Positions 508 to 26,892 of a DNA stretch of 32,205 nucleotides are shown piece by piece. The stretch is from Octopus bimaculoides (lineage: Eukaryota). The position numbers and the translations under genes are program-made. Numbering within the stretch: the stretch's first letter is position 1; every line of letters begins with the position of its first letter. The notes below the pieces were generated by a model, which did not search any database, was not told where the DNA came from, and worked only from the letters and a program-made list of their open reading frames with translations. Location: NCBI RefSeq assembly GCF_001194135.2, contig NC_069008.1, positions 6,284,420-6,316,624 of the forward strand. Direction: 5' to 3'.

Positions 508-579
508 GGTTTTGAGAAATAATAAAATCAAGAAAATTGATAAACGAACATTCAAAAACCTTACCAATTTAAAAAAACT
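508..579 (+). CDS. LRR exon 1 (first in window): VLRNNKIKKIDKRTFKNLTNLKK(L)
   Basis: 72 nt, AAG acceptor and GTAAGT donor, phase 2-2, fits xLxxNxIxxIxxxxFxxLxxLxxL. Confidence 0.85.
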
Positions 580-852
580 GTAAGTTAAATTACTCTTTTT
601 AGCACCGTTTCATTGACGATATACATGTGTATTTCTAAATATCAAAAATCTTCCACTTCTCCTTCGGATTTTCTTCGAATTTGTCTCTACGAAAGAGCGT
701 GTATAATGGTGTATGCCTCTCTCTCTCTCTCTGCAGCGTTCAGTTCTTGTCTTTTTTCCAATCTCCATTCTCCGATTTTCCTTGTCTACGTATTCTCCGC
801 TTCTATTCCTTCATTTTTGACAATTCCCTTTTTCCTCTTCTTCTCTTTTGTC

Positions 853-879
853 TACTACCACCACCACCACTACTACTAC

Positions 880-914
<35 letters not shown>

Positions 915-957
915 CACTACCACCACTACAACCATACTACTACTACCACTACAACCA

Positions 958-990
<33 letters not shown>

Positions 991-1075
991 AACCATACTA
1001 CTACTACCACTACCATCACTACTACTACTACCACCTACTACTACTACTACCACCACTACTACTACTGCCACCTCC
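853..1075. repeat. (ACT/CAC)n compound microsatellite
   Basis: Direct reading; explains the poly-T/Y/L ORFs. Confidence 0.9.
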
Positions 1076-1143
1076 ACCTCTTTCGTTGACTTCACAACTC
1101 CAGCCCCAAAACAATTTCTTACAAACTCACTTTCATTTCACAG

Positions 1144-1215
1144 AGATCTGAGTAAAAATGAAATCAAGGAGATAGAAGATCGCACTTTTAAAAACCCGAC
1201 CAACTTAGAGCAATT
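1144..1215 (+). CDS. LRR exon 2: DLSKNEIKEIEDRTFKNPTNLEQ(L)
   Basis: 72 nt, CAG/GTAAGT; forms the tail of ORF 848..1219. Confidence 0.9.
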
Positions 1216-1320
1216 GTAAGTTAGTTTGCTTATGCAATTTCTTGAACCAGACACGTTCTCCTCTCGCCCCTCCTTTACCTTTATGTGTGTGTAGGTACCT
1301 ACCTCCTTGTCTATCACCTC

Positions 1321-1503
1321 TGACTGGCCCTCGTGCCGGTGGCGCGTAAAAGCACCCACTACACGTTAGGAAGGGCATCCAGCTGTAGAAACTCTGCCAA
1401 ATCAGATTGGAGCCTGGTGTAGCCATCTGGTTTTCACCAGTCATCAGTCAAATCGTCCAACCCATGCTAGCATGGAAAGCAGACGTTAAACGATGATGAT
1501 GAT
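1321..1503 (+). mobile_element. Family C retroposon 3' segment with (GAT)n tail
   Basis: GTAAAAGCACCCACTACAC...GGAAGGGCATCCAGCTGTAGAAAC...GGACGTTAAACGATGATG; a short reverse piece lies at 167-231. Confidence 0.72.
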
Positions 1504-2130
1504 ATATATATAAAGAGACATAGATATAGACAGACAGATTCATAGATTCATATATACATACATACATATGTATATAAGTCCCCTTCAGCTTTGTTCACTA
1601 GTGGTGGCTCAGCATGGCCACAGCCTTAGGGCTAACCTTCTCCAACTACAGTTCTCATATTCGGTTAAAATGTCTTACGTTTAAGCTGGCTCCCATGCAT
1701 TTCCCTGAAGAGAAGATTACATTTTTAACATCGCCGATTCCTATGGAAGGTATAATTTGTAATCTTCGAAACATATGTTGGAAATAAAAGTATGCAGTTA
1801 ACATATGCGTTTTACTCCATTCACTAAATTGATATATACTCAAGTACCCAAAATAACAAGGAGTTTCTACCTCATAAACAGGAGTTACACCACAGTCATT
1901 TTGTGATCTTTGCTACCCTGGTATCTATTAACCAATTTANNNNNNNNNNNNNNNNNNNNNNNNNNNNNNNNNNNNNNNNNNNNNNNNNNNNNNNNNNNNN
2001 NNNNNNNNNNNNNNNNNNNNNNNNNNNNNNNNNNNNNNNNNNNNNNNNNNNNNNNNNNNNNNNNNNNNNNNNNNNNNNNNNNNNNNNNNNNNNNNNNNNN
2101 NNNNNNNNNTATATATATATATATATATAT

Positions 2131-2256
2131 GCAGCTGTAAAAACTCTGCCAAATCAGATTGGAGCCTGGTGTAGCCATCCGGTTGCACCAGTCCTCAGTC
2201 AAATCGTCCAACCCATGCCTGCATGGAAAGCGGACGTTAAACGATGATGATGATGA
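2131..2256 (+). mobile_element. Family C 3' segment
   Basis: Same sequence with (GAT)n tail. Confidence 0.7.
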
Positions 2257-2591
2257 AGATGATGATTCATGGAAAATTCTTATTTTCAATGGATGTCACT
2301 TCAATTCATTTTATAGGAAACATACAGGGACTGGACAAAATCGTGATGCTATGATGCTAGGTGTTTCCATTATTTCCCCAACCCTTGTAATTGTCTGCCA
2401 GGAAAAAGGCTTAACGGCATTTCATCTGTCTTTAGATTCTGGGTTTAAATTCCGCCATAAAATAAGCATCCTTTCGATACAAGGGTCGATGTAAGCAACT
2501 TACTCCCGCTCTGAAATGTCTGGCCTTGTGCCAAAATTTATTACAGGTCTGTTTTATACACTTTCTTAGCAAACTCATTGTTATGTTACAG

Positions 2592-2663
2592 AAATTTGAG
2601 AAATAATGGAATCCAGAAAATTGATGTCCAAACCTTCCAAGATCTTACCAATTTAAAAGAATT
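2592..2663 (+). CDS. LRR exon 3: NLRNNGIQKIDVQTFQDLTNLKE(L)
   Basis: 72 nt, TTACAG/GTAAGT, LRR consensus. Confidence 0.9.
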
Positions 2664-2801: not shown

Positions 2802-3007
2802 GGAGGCGCAATGGCCCAGTGGTTAGGGCAGCGGACTCGCCGTCATAGGATCAAGGTTTCGATTCCCAGATTGGGCGTTGTGAGTGTTTATTGAGCGAAA
2901 ACACCTAAAGTCCCACGAGGTTCCGGCAGGGGATGGTGGCAAACCCTGCTGTACTCTTTCACCACAACTTTCTCTCACTCTTACTTCCTGTTTCTGTTGT
3001 GCCTGTA
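2802..3007 (+). mobile_element. tRNA-derived SINE family A, 5' half (part repeated at 3522-3636)
   Basis: Head GGAGGCGCAATGGCCCAGTGG (A box) ... GGTTTCGATTCC (B box); same body as the other family A copies. Confidence 0.75.
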
Positions 3008-3636
3008 AACACACCAGCAACGGTTGTCAAGCGAAGTTGGGGGGACAAATACAGACACACAAACATACATATATATACGACGGGCTTCTTTCAGTTTCCG
3101 TCTACCAAATCCACTCACAAGGCTTTGCTCGGCCCGATNNNNNNNNNNNNNNNNNNNNNNNNNNNNNNNNNNNNNNNNNNNNNNNNNNNNNNNNNNNNNN
3201 NNNNNNNNNNNNNNNNNNNNNNNNNNNNNNNNNNNNNNNNNNNNNNNNNNNNNNNNNNNNNNNNNNNNNNNNNNNNNNNNNNNNNNNNNNNNNNNNNNNN
3301 NNNNNNNNNNNNNNNNNNNNNNNNNNNNNNNNNNNNNNNNNNNNNNNNNNNNNNNNNNNNNNNNNNNNNNNNNNNNNNNNNNNNNNNNNNNNNNNNNNNN
3401 NNNNNNNNNNNNNNNNNNNNNNNNNNNNNNNNNNNNNNNNNNNNNNNNNNNNNNNNNNNNNNNNNNNNNNNNNNNNNNNNNNNNNNNNNNNNNNNNNNNN
3501 NNNNNNNNNNNNNNNNNNNNNGAGCGAAAACACCTAAAGCCCCACGAGGTTCCGGCGGGGGATGGTAGCAAACCTTGCTGTACTCTTTCACCACAACTTT
3601 CTCTCACTCTTACTTCCTGTTTCTGTTGTGCCTGTA

Positions 3637-3870
3637 AACACACCAGCAACGGTTGTCAAGCGAAGTTGGGGGGACAAATACAGACACACAAACATACATA
3701 TATATACGACGGGCTTCTTTCAGTTTCCGTCTACCAAATCCACTCACAAGGCTTTGCTCGGCCCGATGCTAGAGTAGAAAACACTTGCCCAAGGTGCCAC
3801 GCAGTGGGACTGAACCCAGAACCATGTGGTTGGTAGGCAAGCTACTTACCACACAGCCACTCCTGCGCCT
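3637..3870 (-). mobile_element. SINE family B, 5' portion (part also at 3008-3138)
   Basis: Reverse complement of the head GGCGCAGGAGTGGCTGTGTGGTAAG...GGTTCAGTCCC and the GGCACCTTGGGCAAGTG stem. Confidence 0.75.
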
Positions 3871-4039: not shown

Positions 4040-4111
4040 AGACCTGAGCAAGAATAAAATCACAAGCATTGACGTACAAACCTTCCAAACGCTTTTGAAA
4101 TTGTGGAAATT
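4040..4111 (+). CDS. LRR exon 4: DLSKNKITSIDVQTFQTLLKLWK(L)
   Basis: 72 nt, CAG/GTAAGT, LRR consensus. Confidence 0.9.
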
Positions 4112-5500: not shown

Positions 5501-5572
5501 ATATCTGAATAATAATAAAATAACGAATATCAAAGAACAAACCTTCCGAAACCTTTCTAAATTAGCATATTT
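5501..5572 (+). CDS. LRR exon 5: YLNNNKITNIKEQTFRNLSKLAY(L)
   Basis: 72 nt, CAG/GTAAGT, LRR consensus. Confidence 0.9.
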
Positions 5573-6139
5573 GTAAGTTGGATCTATCTCTTTTTTATGT
5601 TATTTGTTTTTAGACTATTCCATTGACGATATATTTCCAAATAATAGATGCCTTCCCATTCTTCTATATCCCTATATTCAACATCATCTCTACGTAAGTG
5701 TGTATGTCTATGTCTGTATGATATTTAATCTTCCACTCTTTTTTTTTTCTCACAACTATTTTCCCCCCCTTCGCTTCTCATCCATTTTCTCGTTTTCTTA
5801 CTCCTCCACCACCACCACCACTACTACTACCACCACTACTACGACTACTACTATTCGGTACAATAACATAAAACCCACAAGCCAAAAGATTTAGCAAAAG
5901 TTATATAAATTGTAAAAAAAACTATGGGAGAACCAGGAACACTTATTTTTCGGTAACAATTGACATTTTCAAAAGTACACATTCATATTCACGTATTGAA
6001 ATTCCTTTAATATCCATTTTCGTTACAACCTCATTTAATTTTATACTTTATTTCAAACCCAGTTGCGTAGCCGACCTATTTCATATTTTATTACAAATCT
6101 GCTCCATACAGTTTCTTATAATTTCCTGTTGTATTTCAG

Positions 6140-6211
6140 ATATCTGAGTGACAATAAAATCACGAATATTAAAGAAGGCAGTTTCCAAAATCTTATCAAT
6201 TTGCTGCATTT
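6140..6211 (+). CDS. LRR exon 6: YLSDNKITNIKEGSFQNLINLLH(L)
   Basis: 72 nt, TTTCAG/GTAAGT, LRR consensus. Confidence 0.9.
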
Positions 6212-6303
6212 GTAAGTTGACGCCATTTTATTCACAATAAGTTCCTAAATATTAAGTCTTAGCACCCTTTTCTTTTCTCAATAAATAAACAAAGAAAATT
6301 TGA

Positions 6304-6342
<39 letters not shown>

Positions 6343-6707
6343 NNNNNNNNNNNNNNNNNNNNNNNNNNNNNNNNNNNNNNNNNNNNNNNNNNNNNNNNNN
6401 NNNNNNNNNNNNNNNNNNNNNNNNNNNNNNNNNNNNNNNNNNNNNNNNNNNNNNNNNNNNNNNNNNNNNNNNNNNNNNNNNNNNNNNNNNNNNNNNNNNN
6501 NNNNNNNNNNNNNNNNNNNNNNNNNNNNNNNNNNNNNNNNNNNNNNNNNNNNNNNNNNNNNNNNNNNNNNNNNNNNNNNNNNNNNNNNNNNNNNNNNNNN
6601 NNNNNNNNNNNNNNNNNNNNNNNNNNNNNNNNNNNNNNNNNNNNNNNNNNNNNNNNNNNNNNNNNNNNNNNNNNNNNNNNNNNNNNNNNNNNNNNNNNNN
6701 NNNNNNN

Positions 6708-6758
<51 letters not shown>

Positions 6759-6813
6759 TTGTGTGTCTATGTTTGTCTCCACCCCCCCAACATCGCTTGA
6801 CAACCGATGTTCA

Positions 6814-6852
<39 letters not shown>

Positions 6853-6949
6853 TCTATTTATTTTAAATAGACTAATTTTATTTTAAATGTAACCCAATTT
6901 TTAATCAATAAATAATACAATTTCTTATAAACTCCATTTCATGTTACAG

Positions 6950-7021
6950 GGATTTGAGGGGTAACGAAATCACTATTATTGAAGAACATATGTTCAACAA
7001 TCTGAACAGCTTGAATCACTT
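6950..7021 (+). CDS. LRR exon 7: DLRGNEITIIEEHMFNNLNSLNH(L)
   Basis: 72 nt, TTACAG/GTAAGT, LRR consensus. Confidence 0.9.
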
Positions 7022-8253
7022 GTAAGTCGGATGAGTCTTGTTGATTTTATTCGATTGTGTTGGCCAAGGGCCCCAAATTCCCAAACATTACAGGTTTTCC
7101 CCCTCGTTCTCTTTTCTCCGCTTTGTCTCTATTGTGAACGACACTAATGTCTCCGTCTCAGCCACATTCAATCCTCTTCGTCCTCCACCTCTATTCTCTC
7201 ATCTCCTAGTTTGCCGCTTTCCTCCCCTTCACACACACTACTACTACTCCTCATCCTTCTCCTCCTTCATTTCACTTTACTGTCCTTCTTTCATCACTTG
7301 TCCTCTTTCTACATATTTGTATTTTATTTCTTCTGCATCTTAATGATGATGATGATGATGATCGTCATCATCATCATCATCGCCACCATCAACTTGTGGA
7401 CGGGGAAATGATTACGCCGGTTCCAGTGCTCAACTGGTATTTCTTTTATTGACCCGGAAAGGACGAAAGTGGACACCAGTAGAATTTGAACTCAGAACAT
7501 AAAGTCAGAAGAAATGCCTCTAAGCACTNNNNNNNNNNNNNNNNNNNNNNNNNNNNNNNNNNNNNNNNNNNNNNNNNNNNNNNNNNNNNNNNNNNNNNNN
7601 NNNNNNNNNNNNNNNNNNNNNNNNNNNNNNNNNNNNNNNNNNNNNNNNNNNNNNNNNNNNNNNNNNNNNNNNNNNNNNNNNNNNNNNNNNNNNNNNNNNN
7701 NNNNNNNNNNNNNNNNNNNNNNNNNNNNNNNNNNNNNNNNNNNNNNNNNNNNNNNNNNNNNNNNNNNNNNNNNNNNNNNNNNNNNNNNNNNNNNNNNNNN
7801 NNNNNNNNNNNNNNNNNNNNNNNNNNNNNNNNNNNNNNNNNNNNNNNNNNNNNNNNNNNNNNNNNNNNNNNNNNNNNNNNNNNNNNNNNNNNNNNNNNNN
7901 NNNNNNNNNNNNNNNNNNNNNNNNNNNNNNNNNNNNNNNNNNNNNNNNNNNNNNNNNNNNNNNNNNNNNNNNNNNNNNNNNNNNNNNNNNNNNNNNNNNN
8001 NNNNNNNNNNNNNNNNNNNNNNNNNNNNNNNNNNNNNNNNNNNNNNNNNNNNNNNNNNNNNNNNNNNNNNNNNNNNNNNNNNNNNNNNNNNNNNNNNNNN
8101 NNNNNNNNNNNNNNNNNNNNNNNNNNNNNNNNNNNNNNNNNNNNNNNNNNNNNNNNNNNNNNNNNNNNNNNNNNNNNNNNNNNNNNNNNNNNNNNNNNNN
8201 NNNNNNNNNNNNNNNNNNNNNNNNNNNNNNNNNNNNNNNNNNNNNNNNNNNNN

Positions 8254-8510: not shown

Positions 8511-8582
8511 AAACTTAAATAATAATAATGTGACGAGTATTGAAGAACGAGCCTTGAAAAATCTTACCAAATTAAAGAATTT
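8511..8582 (+). CDS. LRR exon 8: NLNNNNVTSIEERALKNLTKLKN(L)
   Basis: 72 nt, TTTCAG/GTAAGT; Leu replaces the consensus Phe. Confidence 0.88.
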
Positions 8583-8644: not shown

Positions 8645-9445
8645 TCATTTCAGTCATTTGACTGCGACCATGCTAGAGCACCGCCTTTAGTCGAACAAAT
8701 CGCCCCCAGGACTTCTTCTTTGTAAGCCTAGTACTTATTCTATTTGGGTCTTTATGCCGAAGCACTAAGTTACGGGGACGTAAGCACACTAACATTGGTC
8801 GTCAAGCGATGGTGGTGGGGACAGAGACGCACAAACATATATATATATATATATATACGATGAATTTATTTCAGTTTCCATCTGCCAACTTATAAAAGTT
8901 CTTAGGGTTTGGTGACAAACTACTATAGGGGGAGGGTTCCCTACTAGCAGACCAGTTTATAATGGAACAGGGGAAGTCTTATCATATAGCACTTAGGTCA
9001 AACGTATATAAAAATAAAGTTCCTATATTGTGTACAGATACAGTAAATGGTTAGTCATAGCTTTCATNNNNNNNNNNNNNNNNNNNNNNNNATATATATA
9101 TATATATATATGTTTCTGTCTACCCAATTCACTCACAAGGCTTTGGTCGGCCCGAGGCTATAGTAGAAGACATTTGTTCAAGGTCTTACGCAGTGGGACT
9201 GAACCCAGAACCATGGGGTTGGGAAACAAGCTTATTACCACACAGCCACACCTGCACCCATATGTATATATATATATATGAATACATGAAAGGCTTCTTT
9301 CAGTTTCCGTCTACTAAATCGACTCACAAGGCTTTGGTCGGCTCGAGGCTATAGTAGACGACACTTGTCCAAGGTGCCACGCAATGGGACTGAACCTAGA
9401 ACCACATGGTCGGGAAGGAAGCTTCTTAAAACATAGCCACACCTG
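8645..9445 (-). mobile_element. Cluster of SINE family B fragments (about 8645-8890, 9113-9260, 9290-9445)
   Basis: Matches to the 18636-19238 copy; boundaries approximate. Confidence 0.65.
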
Positions 9446-9702
9446 GACACATCAAAAACATGCATGAAGCATAATTCCAAAACACTCAAATAAATTTTGT
9501 TGCAAGATTTCTGAGAAATTATCTTTGCTGAAAACATCATAAATCACCAAAGTTGACAGGTATTGCAACATAAATTGTGTTGCCTTTCACCACAATCCAT
9601 CAGAAATTAAACATAAAAATTTTTTGCCCATTTGATATTCTTTGTGTCCTGCCTCCCAAATAGATATTGCATCTATAAAATTACAGGTAAATGATTCAGT
9701 GT

Positions 9703-10371: not shown

Positions 10372-10443
10372 GTACCTGAATGATAACAAAATCCTGAAAA
10401 TTGAAGAAGGTACCTTTGAAAACCTCAACGATTTGGAATATTT
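10372..10443 (+). CDS. LRR exon 9: YLNDNKILKIEEGTFENLNDLEY(L)
   Basis: 72 nt, TTACAG/GTGAGT; tail of ORF 10169..10447. Confidence 0.9.
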
Positions 10444-10772: not shown

Positions 10773-11385
10773 GTCGTTGAGTTAACGGTTCCTCATGAAG
10801 ATAATATGGACGCCATGTGGGCTCGAAAGATGGACCGTTATGAAAACCTCCTCGAGAAATGTCAAGACGCAGGCTGGAAAGCGGAGCATTTTCCAATCGA
10901 AGTCGGATGAAGAGGATCTGTAGGACACAGTGTGAGATGACTGCTGTTATCGTTAGGCCTAACTCATCGTAAGGTAAATATTACCATGACCGATATCCAA
11001 AATACAGTGGAGAAGGCTAGCCACTGGATTTGGTTAAAAAGAGACGATGAGCGATGGCTAGAGAAATATTCAGCTTTGTTTTTAATAACCAGTTGATCTA
11101 GCAAGCGGGGCCTCATATCAGTGAGGTNNNNNNNNNNNNNNNNNNNNNNNNNNNNNNNNNNNNNNNNNNNNNNNNNNNNNNNNNNNNNNNNNNNNNNNNN
11201 NNNNNNNNNNNNNNGGGGGGGGGGCGGTGCGCATTGATGCCGTCGAGAGGTAGGCCCCGAAACGGCGTGCATTCTCTCCTGATGACCCCATACACTTGCT
11301 GGCTTCCGGTATGCGGAGTTCTTGACTGGTAGCACTTGCATGTGCGAGTTGTTTGCAAGGCATAATGTCCACAAGCAAAAAAATA
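10773..11385 (+). mobile_element. 3' fragment of an RLE-type non-LTR retrotransposon (HERO/NeSL-like), pseudogenised, sense to the host gene
   Basis: Translates VVELTVPHEDNMDAMWARKMDRYENLLEKCQDAGWKAEHFPIEVG*RG...EKASHWIWLKR, the ELTVP/KY/EVGxRG endonuclease C-terminus, with stops; then a 3' UTR and A-rich end. Confidence 0.7.
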
Positions 11386-11603: not shown

Positions 11604-11675
11604 AAAGCTGGGTAATAATAAAATCCAGAATATCGAAAACGGAACCTTTCAAGACCTTACCAAATTGCAGTATTT
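11604..11675 (+). CDS. LRR exon 10: KLGNNKIQNIENGTFQDLTKLQY(L)
   Basis: 72 nt, TTACAG/GTAAGT, LRR consensus. Confidence 0.9.
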
Positions 11676-12157: not shown

Positions 12158-12229
12158 ACTTCTGAACCAGAACGGAATCACGGACATTGGAGAAGGAATT
12201 TTCCAAAACCTCACCAAATTGTATGATTT
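12158..12229 (+). CDS. LRR exon 11: LLNQNGITDIGEGIFQNLTKLYD(L)
   Basis: 72 nt, CTACAG/GTAAGT; tail of ORF 12015..12233. Confidence 0.9.
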
Positions 12230-13139: not shown

Positions 13140-13172
<33 letters not shown>

Positions 13173-13965: not shown

Positions 13966-14037
13966 AGATTTGAGTGAAAATAACATCACGGATATCAAAA
14001 GAGGAACCTTTCAAGACCTGCCCTATATTGTTTTTCT
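13966..14037 (+). CDS. LRR exon 12: DLSENNITDIKRGTFQDLPYIVF(L)
   Basis: 72 nt, TTACAG/GTAAGT, LRR consensus. Confidence 0.9.
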
Positions 14038-14662: not shown

Positions 14663-14734
14663 ATCTCTGAACCTTAATAATATCACACATATCGAAGAAG
14701 GGGCTTTCCAGAATCTTCCAAGATTGAGTATACT
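14663..14734 (+). CDS. LRR exon 13: SLNLNNITHIEEGAFQNLPRLSI(L)
   Basis: 72 nt, TTACAG/GTAAGT, LRR consensus. Confidence 0.9.
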
Positions 14735-16038: not shown

Positions 16039-16110
16039 ATACCTGGATCACAATAATATCTCGAGTATTAAGAAAGGGACCTTCGTAAACGTTTCCAGTC
16101 TAATTACACT
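16039..16110 (+). CDS. LRR exon 14: YLDHNNISSIKKGTFVNVSSLIT(L)
   Basis: 72 nt, TTACAG/GTAAGT, LRR consensus. Confidence 0.9.
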
Positions 16111-16413
16111 GTAAGTATTCCTGAGACTATTTCATCGACGCTGTATTTCTTAATATGAAACGCCTCTCCTTCTTTCTTACTTTCCTCTCGTCCATCCCTA
16201 TTTTGTTTGTCAGGTTGAGTGGGTATATCTCTCTAACGACATTTTCCCATTCTTCTTCTTCCATACAATTTTTTCATTTCCTCCTTCATCTTTATTTTCT
16301 GGTACTACTCCCACTTCCTCATTTTCCCTTCTCTTACCCTGGACTCCCTTTTCTCTTTCTTTTTCCACCTTTTTCTACATTCATTTCTTTCCTTTTGTAA
16401 TTCTCATCCTCGA

Positions 16414-16583
16414 CTACACTCTCGGAGTGGTTGGCGTTAGGAAGGTCATCCAGCTGTAGAAACTCTGCCAGATCAGATTGGAGCCTGGTGTAGCCATCTG
16501 GTTTCACCAGTCCTCAGTCAAATCGTCCAACCCATGCTAGCATGGAAAGCGGACGTTAAACGATGATGATGATGATGATGATG
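16414..16583 (+). mobile_element. Family C 3' segment
   Basis: Same sequence with (GAT)n tail. Confidence 0.75.
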
Positions 16584-17147
16584 ACTTCACCCTTTTCCTT
16601 TTCTGTTCTTCTATTACAATTTCCTTTTCTTCTTTAGCCCTTTTCTCTATTTTGTATTCCTTATCATTACCATCATCATCACCTTCTGCTTCACCATCCT
16701 CATCACCACCCCTCCTCCCCATCACCATCATCATATCCGTTTTCTACATCTGCTTTCTTACGTTTATCTTCCTCTTCCTCTTCACATTCAATTTCTATTT
16801 CCCTTCTACCCCTCCTTTCTCATTCCATCTTCTTCTTCTTCTATTCACTTCCTTTTCTCTTTCACTTCAACCTTCTCTCCTTCTAATTCCATCCTTCTTC
16901 TATCTACTTCTCCTCCTCTTCATCATTTCCCCTTTACCCTTCCTTATTCCCTTATTCTTCCGCATCTTTTCCTTTCCTCTTACCTCTACTCTAGTTTCTC
17001 TTCATTTTCTTCTTATGCTGCTTCTTTCATTTCTCTTATTCTTTTTCTACCACCATCACCGCCACCACCACCACTTTCCTCTTCCTTTTCTCCTACATCT
17101 GATTTCCTTGTCTTCTTCTCCCGCCATCTCATATGTGTGTCCTGCTT

Positions 17148-17564: not shown

Positions 17565-17636
17565 AGGCCTGAGTCACAATAATATCATGAATATCGAAAC
17601 AGAAATCGTCCCAAATCTTCCCTATGTAGGACAATT
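17565..17636 (+). CDS. LRR exon 15 (divergent): GLSHNNIMNIETEIVPNLPYVGQ(L)
   Basis: 72 nt, TTACAG/GTAAGT; lacks the consensus Phe. Confidence 0.85.
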
Positions 17637-17670: not shown

Positions 17671-18013
17671 TACTCTTTTACTTGTTTCAGACATTTGACT
17701 GCAGTCATGCTGGAGCACCACCTTTAGTCGAGAAAATCGACCCCAGGACTTATTCTTTGGAAGCCTAGTACTTATTCTATCGGTCTCTTTTGCCGAACTG
17801 CTAAGTTACGGGGACGTAAACACACACACATATATATATATACATATATACGACGGGCTTCTTTCAGTTTCTGTCTACCAAATCCACTCACAAGGCTTTG
17901 GTTGGCCTGAGGCTATAGTTGACAACACCTGCCCAAGGTGACACGCAGTGGGACCGAACCTGGAACCATGTGGTTGGTAAGCAAGCTACTTACCACACAG
18001 CCACTCCTGCGCC
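17671..18013 (-). mobile_element. SINE family B, near full length
   Basis: Reverse complement of 18636-19238 with an internal deletion. Confidence 0.78.
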
Positions 18014-18957: not shown

Positions 18958-19238
18958 GTGTATGTATATATTTGTGTGTCTGTGTTTGTCCCGCCCACCA
19001 TCGCTTGACAACCGATGCTGGTGTGTTTAGGTCCCCGTAACTTAGCGGTTCAACAAAAAGAGACCGATAGAATAAGTGCTAGGCTTACAAAGAATAAGTC
19101 CTGGGNNNNNNNNNNAAAAGAGACCGATAGAATAAGTGCTAGGCTTACAAAGAATAAGTCCTGGGGTCAATTTGCTCGACTATAAAGGCGGTGCTCCAGC
19201 ATGGCCGCAGTCAAATGACTGAAACAAGTAAAAGAGTA
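18636..19238 (+). mobile_element. SINE family B, full length, with an internal duplication and internal (TA)n/(TG)n
   Basis: tRNA-like head, body and 3' end CAAATGACTGAAACAAGTAAAAGAGT; spans a small gap. Confidence 0.78.
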
Positions 19239-19601: not shown

Positions 19602-19673
19602 GTACCTGAGTCATAATCATATAACAGATCTTAAGGAGGGCACTTTCCAAACCCTTCTCACAACATGGTCATT
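19602..19673 (+). CDS. LRR exon 16: YLSHNHITDLKEGTFQTLLTTWS(L)
   Basis: 72 nt, TACAG/GTAAGT. Confidence 0.88.
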
Positions 19674-20469: not shown

Positions 20470-20541
20470 GGACCTGAATCACAATAATATAACACACATT
20501 GAGGGAGGGGCCTTTCGAAACCTCAACGGATTGCGCAAACT
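20470..20541 (+). CDS. LRR exon 17: DLNHNNITHIEGGAFRNLNGLRK(L)
   Basis: 72 nt, TTCCAG/GTAAGC, LRR consensus. Confidence 0.9.
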
Positions 20542-20759: not shown

Positions 20760-21055
20760 CTACTTCTACTACTTCTACTATTACTACTACTACTTCTACT
20801 ACTACTACTACTACTTCTACTACCTCTCTACTTCTACTACTACCACTACTTACTACTACTACTTCAACTACTACTACTACCACTACCTCTCTACTTCTAC
20901 TACTTACTACTACTCCTACTACTACTTACTACCACTACTTCTACTACTACTACTTACTACTTCTACTACTCCACCTACCACTACTACTACTACCTCTCTA
21001 CTTCTACCACTACTACTTACTACTCCTACCACTACTACTACTACTACCTCTCTAC
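20760..21055. repeat. (ACT)n compound microsatellite
   Basis: Direct reading. Confidence 0.9.
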
Positions 21056-21277: not shown

Positions 21278-21349
21278 AGATTTGAGTAATAATACAATTA
21301 CGAATATTGAAGAAGGCGCCTTCGAAATCCGTAACAGGTTGGAAGAACT
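21278..21349 (+). CDS. LRR exon 18: DLSNNTITNIEEGAFEIRNRLEE(L)
   Basis: 72 nt, TTACAG/GTAAGT; tail of ORF 20670..21353. Confidence 0.9.
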
Positions 21350-21849: not shown

Positions 21850-22260
21850 CTAAAGGACAGACAGAGCGTAACGACGCCAGTGCGTGACTGGTACTTAATT
21901 TATCGACCCCGAAAGGATGAAAGGCAAAGTCGACCTCGGTGGAATTTGAACTCAGAACTTAACGGCAGACGAAATACCGCGAAGCATTTCGCCCGGCGTG
22001 CTAACGTTTCTTATTTCTTTATTGCCCACAAGGGGCTAAACATAGAGGGGACAAACAGTGCATAACGACTCCAGTGTGTAACTGGTACTTAATTTATCAA
22101 CCCCGAAAGGATGAAAGGCAAAGTTGACCTCAGTGGAATTTGAACTCAGAACTTAACGGCAGACAAAATACCATTAAGCATTTCGCCCAGCGTGCTAACA
22201 TTTCTTATTTCTTTATTGCCCACAAGGGGCTAAACATAGAGGGGACAAACAAGGACAGAC
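21850..22260 (-). mobile_element. SINE family D, two tandem copies
   Basis: The block from GACCCCGAAAGGATGAAAGGCAAAG to GAGGGGACAAAC occurs twice. Confidence 0.7.
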
Positions 22261-22278
22261 TGTGCATAACGACTCCAG

Positions 22279-22411
22279 TGGTTGGCATTAGGAAGGGCAT
22301 CCAACAGTAGAAACTCTGCCAGATCAGATTGGAACCTGGTGCAGCCTTCTGGCTTGCCAGTCCTCAGTCAAATTGTCCAACCCATGCTAGCATGGAAAGC
22401 GGACGTTAAAC

Positions 22412-22443
<32 letters not shown>
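22279..22443 (+). mobile_element. Family C 3' segment
   Basis: Same sequence with (GAT)n tail followed by (TA)n. Confidence 0.72.
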
Positions 22444-22512: not shown

Positions 22513-22584
22513 ACATTTAAGTAATAATAGCATCACAAGCATTACAGAAGAATCCTTCCAGAACCTTCGCATGTTGCGCCTATT
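22513..22584 (+). CDS. LRR exon 19: HLSNNSITSITEESFQNLRMLRL(L)
   Basis: 72 nt, TTACAG/GTAAGT, LRR consensus. Confidence 0.9.
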
Positions 22585-22693
22585 GTAAGTAGAATCAGTC
22601 TTTTTGGCACAATTTCTTTCTTTCTCTATCACTCGTCTCCATTTTGTATCTGTGGAAATGAATGGATGAAGCTGCATGTCTGTGTAATTGCTA

Positions 22694-22890
22694 CATTTTC
22701 GTTGCCCTCCTGCACTTTCGCTGCCCTCCTGCACTTTCGTCGCCCTGCTGCACTTTCGTCTCCATCCCGCACTTTCGTTGCCCTGCTGCACATTCATTGC
22801 CCTCCTGCACTTTCGTTGCCCTGCTGCACTTTTGTCGCCCTCCTGCACTTTCGCTGCCCTCCTGCACTTTCGTCGCCCTCCTGCACTTTT
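22694..22890. repeat. 19-bp minisatellite, consensus CACTTTCGYYGCCCTSCTG, 10 full units plus a partial unit
   Basis: Units counted directly. Confidence 0.9.
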
Positions 22891-23574
22891 GACTCCGTCC
22901 TCTTCTTCTTGTTCTTTTCGTCTATTTTCTTCTTTGCCTTTTTTTCCCCTAATTTTCTAAAATTGGCTCTTGTAGAATACTGAATTGCACTTTCCGAGGC
23001 CAACAAAGCGAGTCTCAANNNNNNNNNNNNNNNNNNNNNNNNNNNNNNNNNNNNNNNNNNNNNNNNNNNNNNNNNNNNNNNNNNNNNNNNNNNNNNNNNN
23101 NNNNNNNNNNNNNNNNNNNNNNNNNNNNNNNNNNNNNNNNNNNNNNNNNNNNNNNNNNNNNNNNNNNNNNNNNNNNNNNNNNNNNNNNNNNNNNNNNNNN
23201 NNNNNNNNNNNNNNNNNNNNNNNNNNNNNNNNNNNNNNNNNNNNNNNNNNNNNNNNNNNNNNNNNNNNNNNNNNNNNNNNNNNNNNNNNNNNNNNNNNNN
23301 NNNNNNNNNNNNNNNNNNNNNNNNNNNNNNNNNNNNNNNNNNNNNNNNNNNNNNNNNNNNNNNNNNNNNNNNNNNNNNNNNNNNNNNNNNNNNNNNNNNN
23401 NNNNNNNNNNNNNNNNNNNNNNNNNNNNNNNNNNNNNNNNNNNNNNNNNNNNNNNNNNNNNNNNNNNNNNNNNNNNNNNNNNNNNNNNNNNNNNNNNNNN
23501 NNNNNNNNNNNNNNNNNNNNNNNNNNNNNNNNNNNNNNNNNNNNNNNNNNNNNNNNTATACATATATATATATT

Positions 23575-23595
<21 letters not shown>

Positions 23596-23608
<13 letters not shown>

Positions 23609-23782
23609 CATACATATATACGACGGGCTTCTTTCAGTTTCCGCCTACCAAATCCACTCACATGGCTTTGGTCAGCCCGAGGCCATAGTAGAAGACACTT
23701 GCCCAAGGTGCCACTCAGTGGGACTGAACCCGGAACCACGTGGTTGGTAAGCAAGCTACTTACCACACAGCCACTCCTGCAT
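23596..23782 (-). mobile_element. SINE family B, 5' portion
   Basis: Reverse complement of the head and stem. Confidence 0.72.
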
Positions 23783-24219: not shown

Positions 24220-24261
<42 letters not shown>

Positions 24262-24441
24262 ATAAAAGCACCCACTACACTCTCGGAGTGGTTGGCGTTA
24301 GGAAGGGCATCCAGCTGTAGAAACTCTGCCAGATCAGATTGGAGCCTGGTGTAGCCATCTGGTTTCACCAGTCCTCAGTCAAATTGTCCAACCCATGCTA
24401 GCATGGAAAGCGGACGTTAAACGATGATGATGATGATGATG
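24262..24441 (+). mobile_element. Family C 3' segment
   Basis: Same sequence, adjacent to (TA)n. Confidence 0.75.
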
Positions 24442-24624
24442 ACTGATGCAAGTAGAAAATGCGTAATTCGAAGACACCCAAATAGTTTGGGCCTGTAGAG
24501 TTTCATACTTCATCAAAATATGACTTCACATAAGTCAATATTTCATGTGTAACGACGGTGTATATTTGATGCTTATTGCAAATCTGCTTGGGATTATTTT
24601 TATGAACGCATTTTCATGTTTCAG

Positions 24625-24693
24625 AGACTTAAGTCACAACGGTATCACGACCATTGAAGAAATCTTCCCGGATCTTCCTAATTTACAGAAACT
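24625..24693 (+). CDS. LRR exon 20 (69 nt, one codon short): DLSHNGITTIEEIFPDLPNLQK(L)
   Basis: TTTCAG/GTAAGT, phase 2-2 preserved, 23-aa repeat. Confidence 0.88.
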
Positions 24694-25600
24694 GTAAGTT
24701 GGACAAGCATTCTTCTTCTACTCCTCCTCCTCCTTCTTCATTTCTTCCAACTTTTCCAACATCGCTCTACTCACCTTTGTGTCTTTCTAATTCTCATTTT
24801 CCATCTTGTCAATCTTCTTTCACTTTGCGTTTTCTTCTTTACTTCTTTCATCGTTTCTAGGACAATTCTTATCTCACTTCTTCACCACCACCACCACCAC
24901 CACCACCACCATCACCGCCACCACCACCAACAACTTCTTTTTCCTTTCTCTTGTTCTTCTTGACACTCATCCAATTCGTCTTTATTCTGTTTCTGCTTTT
25001 TTAGTCCACATCCTCCTTTGAATAGATTTTCATAATAAATTGGTTCTTATTTTCTTTAAAACTTTGTTGCAACCTTCCATTCCCCTTTCATCTAAGTTCC
25101 CGAGTCCCTTACCATCGTTTAACTCAATCAGTTCCTTGGAAATGACCTATAACATCGGAGTGTGTTACTACAGATTTTTTTGGAAAATGTCACCGCTTAT
25201 TACATCACACCTAAAGTATGACAACAGCATTACTACTCAAATGTTACACATCACAGCAATGCACGTGAGACTAGACACGAGAAAATAAGAACAATTTTCA
25301 ACACCAGACATACCTTACCTGTCCAGACATATCTTGCCTCGTTAACAGATATTGTCTCAAAAATAGTGTATGTTAAGTCATCTACATTATAAAAAATTAC
25401 AGGTGAATCGTTCAATCAGAGAAAAATCTACAAGTTGCAAAATAATTCAGAGCATTTCAATTTTAAAAGCTATGGGACATACAGCAACACATAATTGATA
25501 GATGGGTGATATTTTCAGGACTACACACATGAATGTTCGCATTGAAACTCCTATCAATATTTGTCAGAATTCGAAATTTTATGTTAATTGAAATTGTTTC

Positions 25601-25992
25601 ATCATCATCGTTTAATGTCCGCTTTCCATGCTAGCATGGGTTGGACACTTTGACTGAGGACTGGTGGACCAGATGGTTACACCAGGCTCCAATCTGATTT
25701 GGCAGTGTTTCTACAGCTGGATGCCCTTCCTAACGCCAACCACTCCAAGAGTGTAGCGTATACTTTTACGTGCCACTGGCACGAGGGCCAGTCAGGCGGT
25801 ACTGGTGACGGCCACACTTGAAATGGTGTATTATTTATGTGCCACCTACACAGGAGCCAGTCCAGCGGCACTGGCAACGATCTCGCTCGAATGTCTTACT
25901 GTCAACGGTCACACTCGAAATGGTGTATTTTACGTGCCACCTGCACAGGAGCCAGTCCAGCGACACTGGCAACAATCTCGCTCGAATGTCTT
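25601..25992 (-). mobile_element. Family C copy with an internal ~85-bp duplication (25813-25897 and 25910-25992)
   Basis: Reverse complement with (ATC)n tail; the segment GAAATGGTGTATT...CTCGCTCGAATGTCTT occurs twice. Confidence 0.7.
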
Positions 25993-26052
25993 TTCACGTG
26001 CCATGAACACAAATCTGCTCTCACAACTTCTGAATTCGCTTTCCCTTTACAG

Positions 26053-26124
26053 AGACCTGACACATAATAATATCACGAACTTTAGAGAAGCAACCTTCCA
26101 GCACCTTAACTATTTAAAGGAAAT
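26053..26124 (+). CDS. LRR exon 21: DLTHNNITNFREATFQHLNYLKE(I)
   Basis: 72 nt, TTACAG/GTAAGT; the split codon AT+T gives Ile when joined to the cap exon. Confidence 0.9.
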
Positions 26125-26317
26125 GTAAGTTGGCTCAGCCTTCTTCTTACTATTTCGTTGACTATATTTCTTAAATATCAAATGTCTTTTTCTCTCTCTT
26201 TCTTCATTATCTTGCACTTGCTTCTTATACTTCCTTCGCTTTTTATCTTCTTAATTCGTGGTTGTCCTTGCATCCCTTTCCAGTTGAGCAATCCTAATCT
26301 TGCGGGTTCCTGGGTGC

Positions 26318-26501
26318 TGGCGCTACGTAAAAGCACCCAGTACACTCTGCAATGTGGTTGGCATCAGGAAGGGCATCCAGCTGCAGAAACCATGCGAAAA
26401 TAGACACGGAAGCTGGGCAGCTCTTCAACAGGCCAGCTCCTGTCGAACCATCTAACTCATGCCAGCATGGAAAATGGATGTTAGACGATGATGATGATGA
26501 T
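26318..26501 (+). mobile_element. Family C-related diverged copy
   Basis: GTAAAAGCACC...GGAAGGGCATCCAGCTG...(GAT)n. Confidence 0.6.
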
Positions 26502-26544
26502 GTTTAACATAGTAGGAAATAGCAATTTAGGACCAAAGGCAAAA

Positions 26545-26641
26545 AGATATTTTCGATCCAGTTTGGATTCTTTCGCATCAAATTTGAATTCTTTGCCATC
26601 AAATTTGATGCCAAAGAATCCAAACTGGATCGCAAACATCT
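26545..26641. repeat. Inverted repeat / hairpin, ~43-bp arms and 11-nt loop
   Basis: The 34-bp cores 26554-26587 and 26599-26632 are reverse complements with one mismatch. Confidence 0.85.
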
Positions 26642-26722
26642 CTATAATCTTTGTTTCTTGTCAAATTAAAGAGGAGTTCCTGCAATTTCATTCAGAGCTT
26701 CTTTTTTCTTTCACAATTACAG

Positions 26723-26892
26723 TAACTTCAGAGGCAACAACGTGTCGATGTGTGGCTGTCAGCTGACAGCCGTTGTCAACAATATGACAAGAACATACAA
26801 CAGAAATGTGGACATCCTGGGCGAGTGTCAGACAGATTCAGACAATAACGAAAGCAAAGTAATAACAACACTGGAATATCCGCAATGTAAAA
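26723..26892 (+). CDS. LRR C-terminal cap (LRRCT-like) exon: NFRGNNVSMCGCQLTAVVNNMTRTYNRNVDILGECQTDSDNNESKVITTLEYPQCK
   Basis: 170 nt open frame, TTACAG acceptor, GTTAGT donor, phase 2 in and phase 1 out; four Cys in a CxC...C...C pattern typical of extracellular LRRCT caps. Confidence 0.85.

What the first reader, a model, noticed from the sequence alone, without database searches (positions are those of the whole stretch)
508..26892. Array of at least 21 interchangeable single-LRR cassette exons ahead of one LRRCT cap: candidate combinatorial LRR receptor
Seen: 21 intact phase 2-2 exons (72 nt, one 69 nt). Exons 1-20 end in TT or CT and every LRR exon starts with A or G, so any downstream join among them rebuilds Leu, keeps frame and creates no stop. 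Established: 72-nt one-LRR exons are ordinary in Slit and LGR/glycoprotein-hormone-receptor genes, so the exon size is not new. Lamprey VLRs assemble LRR cassettes somatically, Dscam diversifies by exon choice, and LRR-exon shuffling is described in brown-algal ROCO genes. Inference: the number of exons, their lineage-recent duplication and their variability suggest a diversifying recognition molecule (immune or neural) built by exon skipping or copy-number change.
Basis: partly seen in the sequence, partly recalled or inferred. Interest (0 to 1): 0.8.

Follow-up and report, generated by a model that had tools for sequence, protein, structure and literature searches.

The report
Octopus adhesion-GPCR LRR exon array
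The window holds a real run of 21 one-repeat exons plus a cysteine cap that encode the long leucine-rich-repeat ectodomain of an unannotated member of an octopus-only adhesion-GPCR family, and mix-and-match splicing of these exons is possible (database isoforms of sister genes suggest it) but not shown for this gene.

Summary
There are 21 intact LRR exons on the + strand (20 of 72 nt, one of 69 nt). All are phase 2-2 with YAG/GTAAGT-type splice sites, and a 170-nt LRRCT exon follows. Spliced together they give 559 codons without a stop. No assembly gap lies within 132 nt of an exon.

The gene is not Slit, LGR or VLR. Its LRRCT cap carries a signature found only in Octopus proteins among 1.84 billion representatives. 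Members of that family also carry GPS and 7tm_2 domains, matching the octopus-specific LRR adhesion-GPCR expansion described in 2019. Three paralogous loci have the same one-LRR-per-exon design.

This copy has the most repeats (at least 21, against 3-15 in paralogs). Its exons are old duplicates: 60% mean identity, saturated synonymous sites, and no sign of positive selection.

Combinatorial use is unproven here. RefSeq and GenBank isoforms of paralogs form 24-residue ladders (one gene has 13 isoforms of 409/385/361/337 aa), but some of those models look like alignment artefacts. Somatic VLR-like assembly and Dscam-like exclusive choice are not supported.

Verdict: a new member of a known kind, of moderate interest.

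The parts
508..579 (+). LRR exon 1 (72 nt, phase 2-2), xVLRNNKIKKIDKRTFKNLTNLKK; acceptor AAG; array may continue upstream of the window
1144..1215 (+). LRR exon 2 (72 nt)
2592..2663 (+). LRR exon 3 (72 nt); closest pair with exon 1 (78% nt identity)
4040..4111 (+). LRR exon 4 (72 nt)
5501..5572 (+). LRR exon 5 (72 nt)
6140..6211 (+). LRR exon 6 (72 nt); nearest gap starts 132 nt downstream
6950..7021 (+). LRR exon 7 (72 nt)
8511..8582 (+). LRR exon 8 (72 nt)
10372..10443 (+). LRR exon 9 (72 nt; donor GTGAGT)
11604..11675 (+). LRR exon 10 (72 nt)
12158..12229 (+). LRR exon 11 (72 nt)
13966..14037 (+). LRR exon 12 (72 nt); from here on most repeats carry an N-x-[ST] sequon (N-I-T/N-I-S in five) just after the conserved Asn
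14663..14734 (+). LRR exon 13 (72 nt)
16039..16110 (+). LRR exon 14 (72 nt)
17565..17636 (+). LRR exon 15 (72 nt)
19602..19673 (+). LRR exon 16 (72 nt)
20470..20541 (+). LRR exon 17 (72 nt; donor GTAAGC)
21278..21349 (+). LRR exon 18 (72 nt)
22513..22584 (+). LRR exon 19 (72 nt)
24625..24693 (+). LRR exon 20 (69 nt, one codon shorter in the convex loop)
26053..26124 (+). LRR exon 21 (72 nt, ends AT); cap-adjacent repeat, counterpart of the 'YEDGAFLFLPSI' repeat of paralogues
26723..26892 (+). LRRCT cap exon (170 nt, phase 2 in, phase 1 out): NFRGNNVSMCGCQLTAVVNNMTRTYNRNVDILGECQTDSDNNESKVITTLEYPQCK; holds all four Cys of the 559-aa product

Best explanation
What it is. The window carries the middle of one protein-coding gene on the + strand. 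It encodes the LRR ectodomain of a previously unannotated member of an Octopus-restricted family. The family architecture is: signal peptide, LRRNT, a variable number of 24-residue LRRs, a family-specific LRRCT, a Cys-rich Ly6/uPAR-like module, a hormone-receptor-like module, GAIN/GPS, and a 7TM domain. That makes it an adhesion GPCR.

How it arose and works. Each LRR sits on its own 72-nt phase-2 exon, the design shared by the whole family. This copy grew to at least 21 repeats by old tandem duplications of an exon plus about 100 nt upstream and about 65 nt downstream of flanking intron. The default product is the in-order splice of all the exons: a long, heavily N-glycosylated LRR solenoid closed by the 4-Cys cap, presumably a ligand- or adhesion-binding surface of the receptor. 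Because the exons are phase-symmetric, skipping any of them yields a shorter but foldable solenoid. Some such skipping probably occurs, as annotated for paralogues, but a programmed combinatorial repertoire is not shown.

Shown: the exon anatomy, the ORF, family membership through the LRRCT, the shared exon design, the age of the duplicates, and purifying selection on the scaffold codons.

Inferred: that the missing 3' part of this gene encodes GAIN/7TM, that the gene is expressed, and how it is spliced.
For: - Exon anatomy and ORF.
- LRR identity: LRR_8 E=2.3e-120. The per-position profile is LxLxxNxIxxIxxxxFxxLxxL.
- Extracellular features: 17 N-x-S/T sequons, and Cys residues only in the cap, spaced CxC...C...C.
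- LRRCT exon against 1.84e9 representative proteins: 11 hits, 10 of them Octopus bimaculoides, O. sinensis or O. vulgaris proteins, best 62% identity. An alignment shows the shared CGCxLxAxVN...GEC...QC signature at 37-58% identity.
- Family search: 48 clusters, every one carrying a source name is Octopus, several with GPS, GAIN or 7tm_2. Checked here: P0168 has LRR_8, the same LRRCT signature and GPS (54.5 bits). P0184 has LRR_8 and 7tm_2 (39.6 bits).
- Three paralogue loci (L001, L002, L003) have 72-nt (one 69-nt) exons starting with A and ending TT (a few CT or GT), with YAG acceptors and almost all GTAAGT donors. The intronic flanks are visibly homologous to those in the window.
- Published context: an octopus-specific adhesion-GPCR expansion, some members with LRRs, co-localised, expressed in axial nerve cord, suckers and skin (PMC6408891).
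- Selection: dN/dS is 0.05 at scaffold codons and 0.54-0.58 at variable codons, and pS is 0.54-0.63. This fits old, functional repeats.
- Isoform ladders in paralogues.
Against: - No LRRNT exon lies in positions 1-507, and no Ly6-like, HRM or GAIN exon lies in 26893-32205. The GPCR part of this gene is therefore unseen, and it could be a secreted or otherwise truncated family member.
- No protein or transcript of this gene, or of a close orthologue, was found. Expression is unproven.
- Pfam's LRRCT model does not score the cap.
- The protein-search tool listed no hit longer than about 980 aa, so a long annotated orthologue could have been missed.
- Exon order depends on scaffolding across gaps.
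Confidence: 0.72

Rival explanations
1. Programmed combinatorial receptor. The 21 cassette exons are included or skipped in regulated or stochastic combinations, so that cells or tissues express many different LRR surfaces. This would be a Dscam- or protocadherin-like identity or recognition code built by exon skipping.
For: - All joins are frame- and Leu-preserving.
- Paralogues have database isoform ladders in 24-aa steps. In one gene, four N-terminal exons are used in different combinations across 13 isoforms.
- P0001 and P0012 differ by one LRR, and P0030 and P0089 differ by three.
- The O. vulgaris model P0151 skips one genomic exon.
- The variable positions differ widely between repeats.
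Against: - No transcript data exist for this gene.
- The isoforms are computed gene models. Several (X2, X7, X13) contain chimeric exons joined inside near-identical sequence, and one exon in that locus is 73 nt because of an A8 run. These are signs of alignment, reverse-transcription template-switch or assembly artefacts.
- All 21 exons here have strong consensus splice sites, which favours constitutive use.
- No intron-end pairing rises above shuffled controls.
- dN/dS is below 1.
Confidence: 0.2
2. Non-GPCR family member. The gene ends soon after the cap (LRR-LRRCT with or without the Ly6-like module) and encodes a secreted or GPI-anchored LRR protein, not a 7TM receptor.
For: - Many annotated family members are short and lack 7TM, for example P0001 (600 aa), P0133 (456 aa) and P0194 (409 aa, which ends after the Cys-rich module).
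- Nothing GPCR-like is found in the 5.3 kb downstream of the cap.
Against: - Those short models may be fragments of poorly assembled or poorly annotated genes. Several start inside the LRRCT.
- Introns in paralogue loci are long: the genes span 40-62 kb.
- The cap exon ends in an open phase-1 donor, so more coding exons must follow.
Confidence: 0.25
3. Unexpressed relic or pseudogene. The array is a decaying duplicate that escaped annotation because it is not transcribed.
For: No protein or ORF of this locus is in any collection searched.
Against: - There are 22 consecutive intact exons, 559 codons without a stop, every splice site is intact, and no degenerate copies are present.
- Strong purifying selection has acted on the scaffold codons since duplication (dN/dS 0.05).
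Confidence: 0.06
4. VLR-like somatic assembly, or an orthologue of a classical LRR gene such as Slit, LGR, LRIG, chaoptin or IGFALS.
For: - The resemblance is only superficial: many LRR modules ahead of one cap.
- Database names of paralogues include 'slit-like', 'chaoptin' and 'IGFALS-like'.
- PDB sequence hits are to IGFALS, LRIG1, TLRs and LGR4/5.
Against: - Every cassette has canonical splice sites, lies in one orientation and is in order, so the germline gene is already complete.
- Best identity to any named LRR protein is about 30-44% and generic.
- The cap signature occurs only in the Octopus family.
- Slit has four capped LRR blocks, not one run of 21.
Confidence: 0.02

Closest known systems
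Octopus-specific adhesion-GPCR expansion ('group 3' of Ritschard et al. 2019, PMC6408891); RefSeq/GenBank models named 'adhesion G-protein coupled receptor G6-like', 'slit homolog 1-like', 'chaoptin', 'LRRC15-like', 'decorin-like' in O. bimaculoides, O. sinensis and O. vulgaris
   Same: It shares the same LRRCT signature, the same 24-residue LRR type, and the same one-LRR-per-72-nt phase-2 exon design with homologous intron flanks.
   Different: - At least 21 LRRs, against 3-15 by motif count in the members examined.
- Its exons are much more diverged from one another than the near-identical alternating A/B exons of paralogues.
- The LRRCT is at most 62% identical to any member.
- The GAIN/7TM part is not in the window.
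Vertebrate ADGRA2/ADGRA3 (GPR124/GPR125)
   Same: These are adhesion GPCRs with N-terminal LRRs plus LRRCT, a hormone-binding domain and GAIN (PMC9539791). Family members hit Pfam PF26588, which a UniRef entry names the 'ADGRA2/3 GAIN domain'.
   Different: ADGRA proteins have only a few LRRs and an Ig domain. The octopus family has a Cys-rich Ly6/uPAR-like module instead, and up to at least 21 LRRs. Orthology was not tested.
Slit, LGR4-6 / glycoprotein-hormone receptors, NLR genes: exon-modular LRR domains
   Same: One LRR per short, phase-symmetric exon, which makes exon skipping frame-neutral. This is described as a general precondition for LRR alternative splicing (PMC6642158). That LRR exons are 72 nt in Slit and LGR is from my own knowledge.
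   Different: The cap, the downstream domains and the family are different. Sequence similarity is only generic LRR similarity.
Dscam1 / clustered protocadherins (isoform diversity for cell identity)
   Same: The only likeness is conceptual: many similar cassette exons in tandem that could diversify an extracellular recognition surface.
   Different: Dscam picks exactly one exon per cluster through docking-selector RNA pairing, and protocadherins use promoter choice. Here exons are additive solenoid units, and no flank complementarity rises above shuffled controls.
Lamprey/hagfish VLR
   Same: An LRR solenoid of variable length capped by an LRRCT.
   Different: The VLR germline gene is incomplete, and its cassettes lack splice sites and are copied in somatically (my own knowledge). 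Here the germline gene is complete and spliceable.
Brown-algal ROCO LRR exon shuffling (PMC11378527)
   Same: 72-bp-type LRR exons, exon duplication and alternative splicing proposed as a source of receptor diversity (listed; the paper was not read in detail).
   Different: That system is an intracellular ROC-COR GTPase family in a different kingdom. No homology is implied.

Membership tests
Octopus LRR adhesion-GPCR family | Family-specific LRRCT: x-M-x-C-G-C-x-L-x-A-x-V-N ... Y-N-R-x-V-x-V-x-G-x-C ... Y-x-Q-C, with four Cys | tested here: met
   A phmmer search with the cap exon hits only Octopus family proteins, plus one spurious bacterial repeat protein. The alignment shows 37-58% identity with all four Cys aligned.
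Octopus LRR adhesion-GPCR family | One 24-residue LRR per 72-nt phase-2 exon, with YAG acceptor and GTAAGT donor | tested here: met
   Window. Paralogue loci L001, L002 and L003.
Octopus LRR adhesion-GPCR family | Cap-adjacent last LRR followed by the LRRCT on a separate exon that ends in phase 1 | tested here: met
   Exon 21 'ITNFREATFQHLNYLKE|INFRGNN' aligns with 'IEKYEDGAFLFLPSIVEINLENNN' of paralogues. The cap exon ends ...CAATGTAAAA|GT.
Octopus LRR adhesion-GPCR family | LRRNT with signal peptide upstream of the array | not testable with these tools
   No match in window 1-507. It must lie upstream of the window.
Adhesion GPCR (class B2) | GAIN/GPS domain followed by a 7tm_2 domain in the same polypeptide | not testable with these tools
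   Not present in 26893-32205. Shown only for family members P0168 (GPS, 54.5 bits) and P0184 (7tm_2, 39.6 bits).
Extracellular 'typical' LRR domain with LRRCT cap | LxxLxLxxNxL core repeated in tandem | tested here: met
   LRR_8 E=2.3e-120, 10 stretches. Invariant L1, L3 and N6, with I8, I11 and F16 in at least 19 of 21 repeats.
Extracellular 'typical' LRR domain with LRRCT cap | Match to the Pfam LRRCT model (PF01463) | tested here: not met
   No Pfam hit for the cap at E<=1. The cap is recognised only by its Cys pattern and its homologues, one of which UniRef names 'LRRCT domain-containing protein'.
Lamprey VLR-type somatic assembly | Incomplete germline gene, with donor cassettes that lack splice sites and lie in both orientations | tested here: not met
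   All 21 cassettes have canonical splice sites, the same strand, and are collinear and in frame.
Dscam-type mutually exclusive splicing | Docking/selector RNA complementarity in the flanks of each alternative exon | tested here: not met
   Mean duplex energy between downstream and upstream flanks is -10.6 kcal/mol, against -10.5 for shuffled sequences. Adjacent pairs are no better than others.
Slit / LGR / LRIG / chaoptin / IGFALS orthologue | Closest homologues and domain order of that family | tested here: not met
   Best hits are Octopus family members at about 40% identity. Named families score 26-34% and generically. PDB hits spread over IGFALS, LRIG1, TLRs and LGR4/5 without a specific cap match.
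Alternatively spliced LRR cassette gene | Transcripts of this gene that differ by whole LRR exons | not testable with these tools
   No transcript or protein of this locus is in the collections. There is only indirect evidence from the isoform ladders of paralogues, some of it doubtful.

The most novel reading that the evidence does not exclude
An octopus-specific adhesion-GPCR family uses arrays of phase-symmetric single-LRR exons as a splicing-based diversity generator. Different cells would include different subsets of LRR cassettes, up to 2^21 forms for this gene. That would give sensory or neuronal cells a combinatorial surface code comparable in purpose to Dscam1 or clustered protocadherins, built on an LRR solenoid attached to a GPCR. 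The 13-isoform, 24-residue ladder annotated for one O. sinensis paralogue would then be the first glimpse of it.
Probability: 0.2. Interest if true: 0.8.

Novelty: new member of a known kind. Interest (0 to 1): 0.42.

Why it matters
Cephalopods built large nervous and chemotactile systems partly through lineage-specific receptor and adhesion-gene expansions, such as protocadherins, GPCRs and chemotactile receptors. This locus adds an unannotated and unusually long member (at least 21 LRRs) to the octopus-only LRR adhesion-GPCR expansion. It also shows that the whole family is built from frame-neutral single-LRR exons that are gained, lost and, according to database models, skipped.

This makes a concrete question testable: do octopuses diversify an adhesion-GPCR ectodomain by LRR-exon choice? 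The window gene is the best test case. Its exons are only 44-78% identical, so long-read cDNA can assign each one without the mapping ambiguity that affects the near-identical exons of its paralogues.

If the answer is no, the locus is an ordinary multi-exon LRR gene and a useful correction to current octopus annotations.

Tried and rejected
- Intron-end RNA pairing (Dscam-like or looping). Duplex energies between downstream and upstream flanks equal shuffled controls, and adjacent pairs are no better. Rejected.
- 'Intron flanks are more conserved than synonymous sites, hence selected splicing elements'. A first MAFFT-based estimate suggested this. A gap-penalised measure with shuffled controls gives 0.42-0.46 against 0.30 for shuffles. 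That is about the same as synonymous or third-position identity (0.37-0.50). The claim is dropped, and only short blocks remain as a lead.
- Positive selection on the variable LRR positions. dN/dS is 0.54-0.58 and dS is saturated. No support.
- A 1448-nt higher-order tandem unit, suggested by equal exon spacing. There are no HSPs at that offset beyond the exon flanks, and both intervals contain gaps of estimated length. It is treated as coincidence or artefact.
- Extra or decayed exons in long introns. None found.
- Searching for the gene's own protein or an orthologue:
  - the full spliced product;
  - the last three LRRs plus the cap (essentially empty);
  - the cap exon against 1.84e9 representatives;
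  - exact look-up of the two unspliced cap ORFs.
  No hit exceeded 62% identity.
I assumed structure prediction, which has the same input rule, would refuse it too, so no structure was predicted.
- The look-up of encoding contigs failed for P0012 and P0030 because they are not the longest isoforms.
- Downstream Ly6-like/HRM exons and an upstream LRRNT were sought in the window. None found.
- The window shares only interspersed repeats with L001-L003, so there is no orthology with those loci.
- Other genes in the introns or on the minus strand. Only repeat-derived or gap-spanning ORFs were found, and no tRNA.

Full report
OBSERVATION

The window is 32,205 nt long, 38.5% G+C, with ten N runs. 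Twenty are 72 nt and one (24625-24693) is 69 nt. All are on the + strand.

- Twenty of 21 acceptors are YAG; exon 1 has AAG.
- Nineteen of 21 donors are GTAAGT. Exon 9 has GTGAGT and exon 17 has GTAAGC.
- Exons 1-20 end in TT or CT and every exon starts with A or G. The split codon is therefore always Leu, whichever downstream exon is joined.
- Exon 21 ends in AT and joins the T that opens a 170-nt cap exon (26723-26892), giving Ile.
- The cap exon ends in phase 1 before GTTAGT, so more coding exons must follow.

Spliced in order, the 22 exons give 559 codons without a stop. Pfam LRR_8 scores E=2.3e-120. A profile of exon plus flanks finds the 21 units at E=1e-25 to 1e-31 and nothing else. There are no decayed copies in the long introns.

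GAPS

No gap touches an exon. The nearest begins 132 nt after exon 6. The reading frame is carried by splice phase, so the estimated gap lengths do not matter for it.

- Gap 3139-3521 is flanked by the same 246 nt on both sides at 98.4% identity.
- Gap 19106-19115 is flanked by the same ~50 nt.
- Both look like unmerged contig overlaps, so intron 3 is probably about 629 nt shorter than written.
- Three gaps (6343-6707, 7529-8253, 23019-23556) are long enough to hide a ~250-nt exon unit.

The array also runs to within about 500 nt of the window start with no LRRNT exon in sight. 'At least 21' is therefore correct. Exon order relies on scaffolding of nine contig pieces. No two exons are more than 78% identical, so none is an assembly duplicate.

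WHAT THE PROTEIN LOOKS LIKE

The repeats are 24-residue 'typical' extracellular LRRs. Positions L1, L3 and N6 are invariant, and I8, I11, F16, L19 and L22 are nearly invariant. All other positions vary, most of all the two residues before L1. The product has 17 N-x-S/T sequons. Its only four cysteines lie in the cap, spaced C-x-C...C...C. Solved structures give only generic LRR matches: IGFALS, LRIG1, TLR3/7/13, LRRC15 and LGR4/5.

WHICH GENE FAMILY

The whole product finds nothing closer than about 40-44% identity. The best animal hits are Octopus bimaculoides and O. vulgaris models named 'IGFALS-like', 'chaoptin isoform X4' and 'adhesion GPCR G6-like'. These share the window's cap sequence.

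The cap exon alone was searched against 1.84 billion representative proteins. It gave 11 hits, ten of them Octopus proteins (O. bimaculoides, O. sinensis, O. vulgaris and one unnamed Logan contig) and one spurious bacterial repeat protein. The alignment shows a shared signature..MxCGCxLxAxVN..TYNRxVxVxGEC.TD..N..K.I.IL.Y.QC, at 37-58% identity to the window.

A search with the non-LRR part of one member returned 48 clusters, every one with a source name being from Octopus. Several carry GPS, GAIN ('ADGRA2/3 GAIN') or 7tm_2. I checked two members directly:

- P0168 has LRR_8, the same cap and GPS (54.5 bits; cut-off 22.5).
- P0184 has LRR_8 and 7tm_2 (39.6 bits; cut-off 20.6).

The family architecture, read from the sequences, is: signal peptide, LRRNT, a variable number of LRRs, a cap-adjacent LRR, LRRCT, a 10-Cys module, a hormone-receptor-like module, GAIN/GPS and 7TM. 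NCBI calls the 10-Cys module Ly6/PLAUR-like; it is sometimes absent and once triplicated. The hormone-receptor-like module scores only weakly against HRM (E=0.0035).

This matches the octopus-specific adhesion-GPCR expansion of Ritschard et al. 2019. Those authors found LRRs in 5 of 22 members, genomic co-localisation, signs of positive selection, and expression in axial nerve cord, suckers and skin (PMC6408891). The nearest vertebrate architecture is ADGRA2/3 (LRR-Ig-HBD-GAIN-7TM; PMC9539791).

SAME EXON DESIGN IN PARALOGUES

I examined three paralogue loci:

- L001: O. sinensis VCDQ01005700.1.
- L002: O. vulgaris OX597815.1.
- L003: O. sinensis VCDQ01004985.1.

All carry 72-nt (one 69-nt) LRR exons that start with A and end in TT (a few CT or GT), with YAG acceptors and almost all GTAAGT donors. 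Their flanking intron sequence is visibly homologous to the window's. For example..TATCACAAAT.. lies about 50 nt upstream, and GTAAGTT.G.TCAGT.T.TTGATACTATTT lies downstream.

In those loci the exons occur as two alternating, nearly identical types. Duplication or homogenisation there is therefore recent. In the window it is old:

- Exon-exon identity averages 60% (range 44-78%).
- pS is 0.54-0.63, which is saturated.
- dN/dS is 0.05 at scaffold codons and 0.54-0.58 at variable codons.
- Flank homology is detectable only from about -100 to +65 nt (0.42-0.46 identity, against 0.30 for shuffled controls).
- Beyond that, the introns share only interspersed repeats.

LRR motif counts in family members range from 3 to 15. 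The window has at least 21.

MECHANISM

Shown: the gene encodes a long LRR solenoid with a family-specific cap, made from phase-symmetric single-repeat exons. These arose by tandem duplication of exon-plus-flank units and have been kept under purifying selection.

Inferred: it continues into the Cys-rich, HRM, GAIN and 7TM exons outside the window, and it is expressed as a surface receptor whose LRR face binds a ligand or partner.

Splicing is the open question. Strong consensus sites on all 21 exons suggest in-order inclusion by default. Phase symmetry makes skipping harmless to the fold, a principle already described for NLR and Slit genes (PMC6642158).

Indirect evidence for skipping comes from database isoforms of paralogues.

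- One O. sinensis gene has 13 RefSeq isoforms of 409, 385 (four isoforms), 361 (five) and 337 (three) aa.
- A second gene has isoforms of 525, 501 and 477 aa.
- O. vulgaris GenBank models have 489, 465 and 441 aa.
- Mapping the 13 isoforms onto the genomic exons of L003 shows four N-terminal exons used in different combinations, five exons that are mostly constant, and two unused.
- P0001 and P0012 differ by exactly one LRR. P0030 and P0089 differ by three.

Against taking this at face value:

- Isoforms X2, X7 and X13 contain chimeric repeats joined inside the identical 'NNISTIKEG' stretch.
- The corresponding genomic exon is 73 nt because of an A8 run.
- These are typical symptoms of read mis-assignment, reverse-transcription template switching or assembly error among near-identical repeats.
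- I could not inspect reads.

For the window gene itself no transcript or protein exists in the collections.

ALTERNATIVES CONSIDERED

- VLR-like somatic assembly is contradicted by a complete, collinear, spliceable germline gene.
- Dscam-like exclusive choice is implausible for additive solenoid units, and no flank complementarity exceeds shuffled controls.
- Orthology to Slit, LGR, LRIG, chaoptin or IGFALS is contradicted by the Octopus-only cap and by merely generic LRR similarity.
- A pseudogene is unlikely given 22 intact exons and dN/dS of 0.05 on scaffold codons.
- A secreted, non-7TM family member cannot be excluded, because the 3' end is outside the window.

VERDICT

Recent duplication, an immune or VLR-like role, and combinatorial use of this gene do not, or remain untested.

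It is a new, unusually long member of a known octopus-specific LRR adhesion-GPCR family with a known type of exon architecture. I found no paper describing LRR-cassette splicing in cephalopods. The combinatorial idea therefore remains an open, directly testable hypothesis, at roughly 0.2 probability for a biologically meaningful repertoire.

Noticed in passing
window 2893-3138 vs 3522-3767; 19056-19105 vs 19116-19165: The sequence on the two sides of gaps 3139-3521 and 19106-19115 is the same (98.4% over 246 nt; about 50 nt identical). These are probably unmerged contig overlaps, not missing sequence, so intron 3 is likely about 629 nt shorter than written.
   Followed up: partly
window exon starts 1144, 2592, 4040 (also 5501 to 6950): Exon-to-exon spacing is exactly 1448, 1448 (and 1449) nt, although the first two intervals contain gaps of different estimated size (170 and 383 nt). 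There is no homology at that offset beyond the exon flanks. It is a coincidence or a gap-sizing artefact, and remains unexplained.
   Followed up: partly
window ~1331-1514, 2110-2265, 16398-16584, 22277-22434, 24259-24445, 26325-26509, 31512-31710: Seven copies (73-99% identical) of a short interspersed element ending in a (GAT)n tail lie in introns and downstream of the array. ARAGORN finds no tRNA in the window.
   Followed up: no
window 3673-3866, 9062-9446, 17817-18010, 23587-23780, 28063-28256 (also matches in L002 ~61000-61220): This is a second ~190-nt interspersed repeat family (65-89% identical), often next to (TA)n tracts and assembly gaps. It is shared with the O. vulgaris locus at 81-89% identity.
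   Followed up: no
window 852-1066, 5774-5861, 20760-21047, 24854-24936 (also 13108-13180, 17028-17074): (CTA/CCA)n trinucleotide tracts recur 160-260 nt downstream of exons 1, 5, 17 and 20. They may have been part of the ancestral duplicated unit or may be a microsatellite-prone spot.
   Followed up: no
window 22697-22889 (intron 19): A 19-nt tandem repeat (TTTCGTTGCCCTCCTGCAC, about 10 copies, 84% matches). There is also a 194-nt two-copy tandem at 21855-22251 and a 95-nt two-copy tandem at 25808-25992.
   Followed up: no
window ~29490-30900, + strand: Overlapping ORFs (for example 30384-30899, containing 'KILWDFDFQMD') resemble, from memory, the C-terminal region of invertebrate retrotransposon polyproteins. 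Pfam gives no hit, so this is an unverified impression of a decayed mobile element downstream of the cap exon.
   Followed up: partly
window, about -50 to -36 and +7 to +30 relative to each LRR exon: Short intronic blocks are present in at least 70% of the 21 units and recur next to 'type A' LRR exons of the O. sinensis and O. vulgaris paralogues. The upstream block is ..ATCACAAATCTGCTC.. and the downstream block is GTAAGTTGGATCAGTCTTGTTGATACTATTTCATTGACGAT. They could be splicing signals for these small exons or simply residual homology. Overall flank identity is no higher than synonymous-site identity.
   Followed up: partly
window exons 1-11 vs exons 12-21: The array has two halves. Exons 1-11 mostly read N-[KEG]-I after the conserved Asn and are 58-78% identical to each other. 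Exons 12-21 mostly read N-N-I-[TS], creating an N-glycosylation sequon, with His before the Asn. This suggests two separate rounds of block duplication.
   Followed up: no
L003 (O. sinensis VCDQ01004985.1) 11130-11202; exons at 28668 and 31667: One LRR exon of this paralogue is 73 nt because of an A8 run, which is a frameshift or a homopolymer assembly error. RefSeq isoforms X2, X7 and X13 carry chimeric repeats at that position. Two further intact genomic LRR exons are used by none of the 13 isoforms.
   Followed up: partly
P0149 (O. sinensis 'protein slit-like, partial', locus L001): This family member has three tandem copies of the 10-Cys Ly6/uPAR-like module after the LRRCT. Other members (P0127, P0130, P0131) lack it altogether, so this module also behaves as a cassette.
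   Followed up: no
output as a whole: None of the 120 best hits of the first protein search is longer than 978 aa. That is odd for LRR proteins and suggests the tool may not return long proteins. A full-length (>1000 aa) orthologue could therefore have been missed.
   Followed up: no
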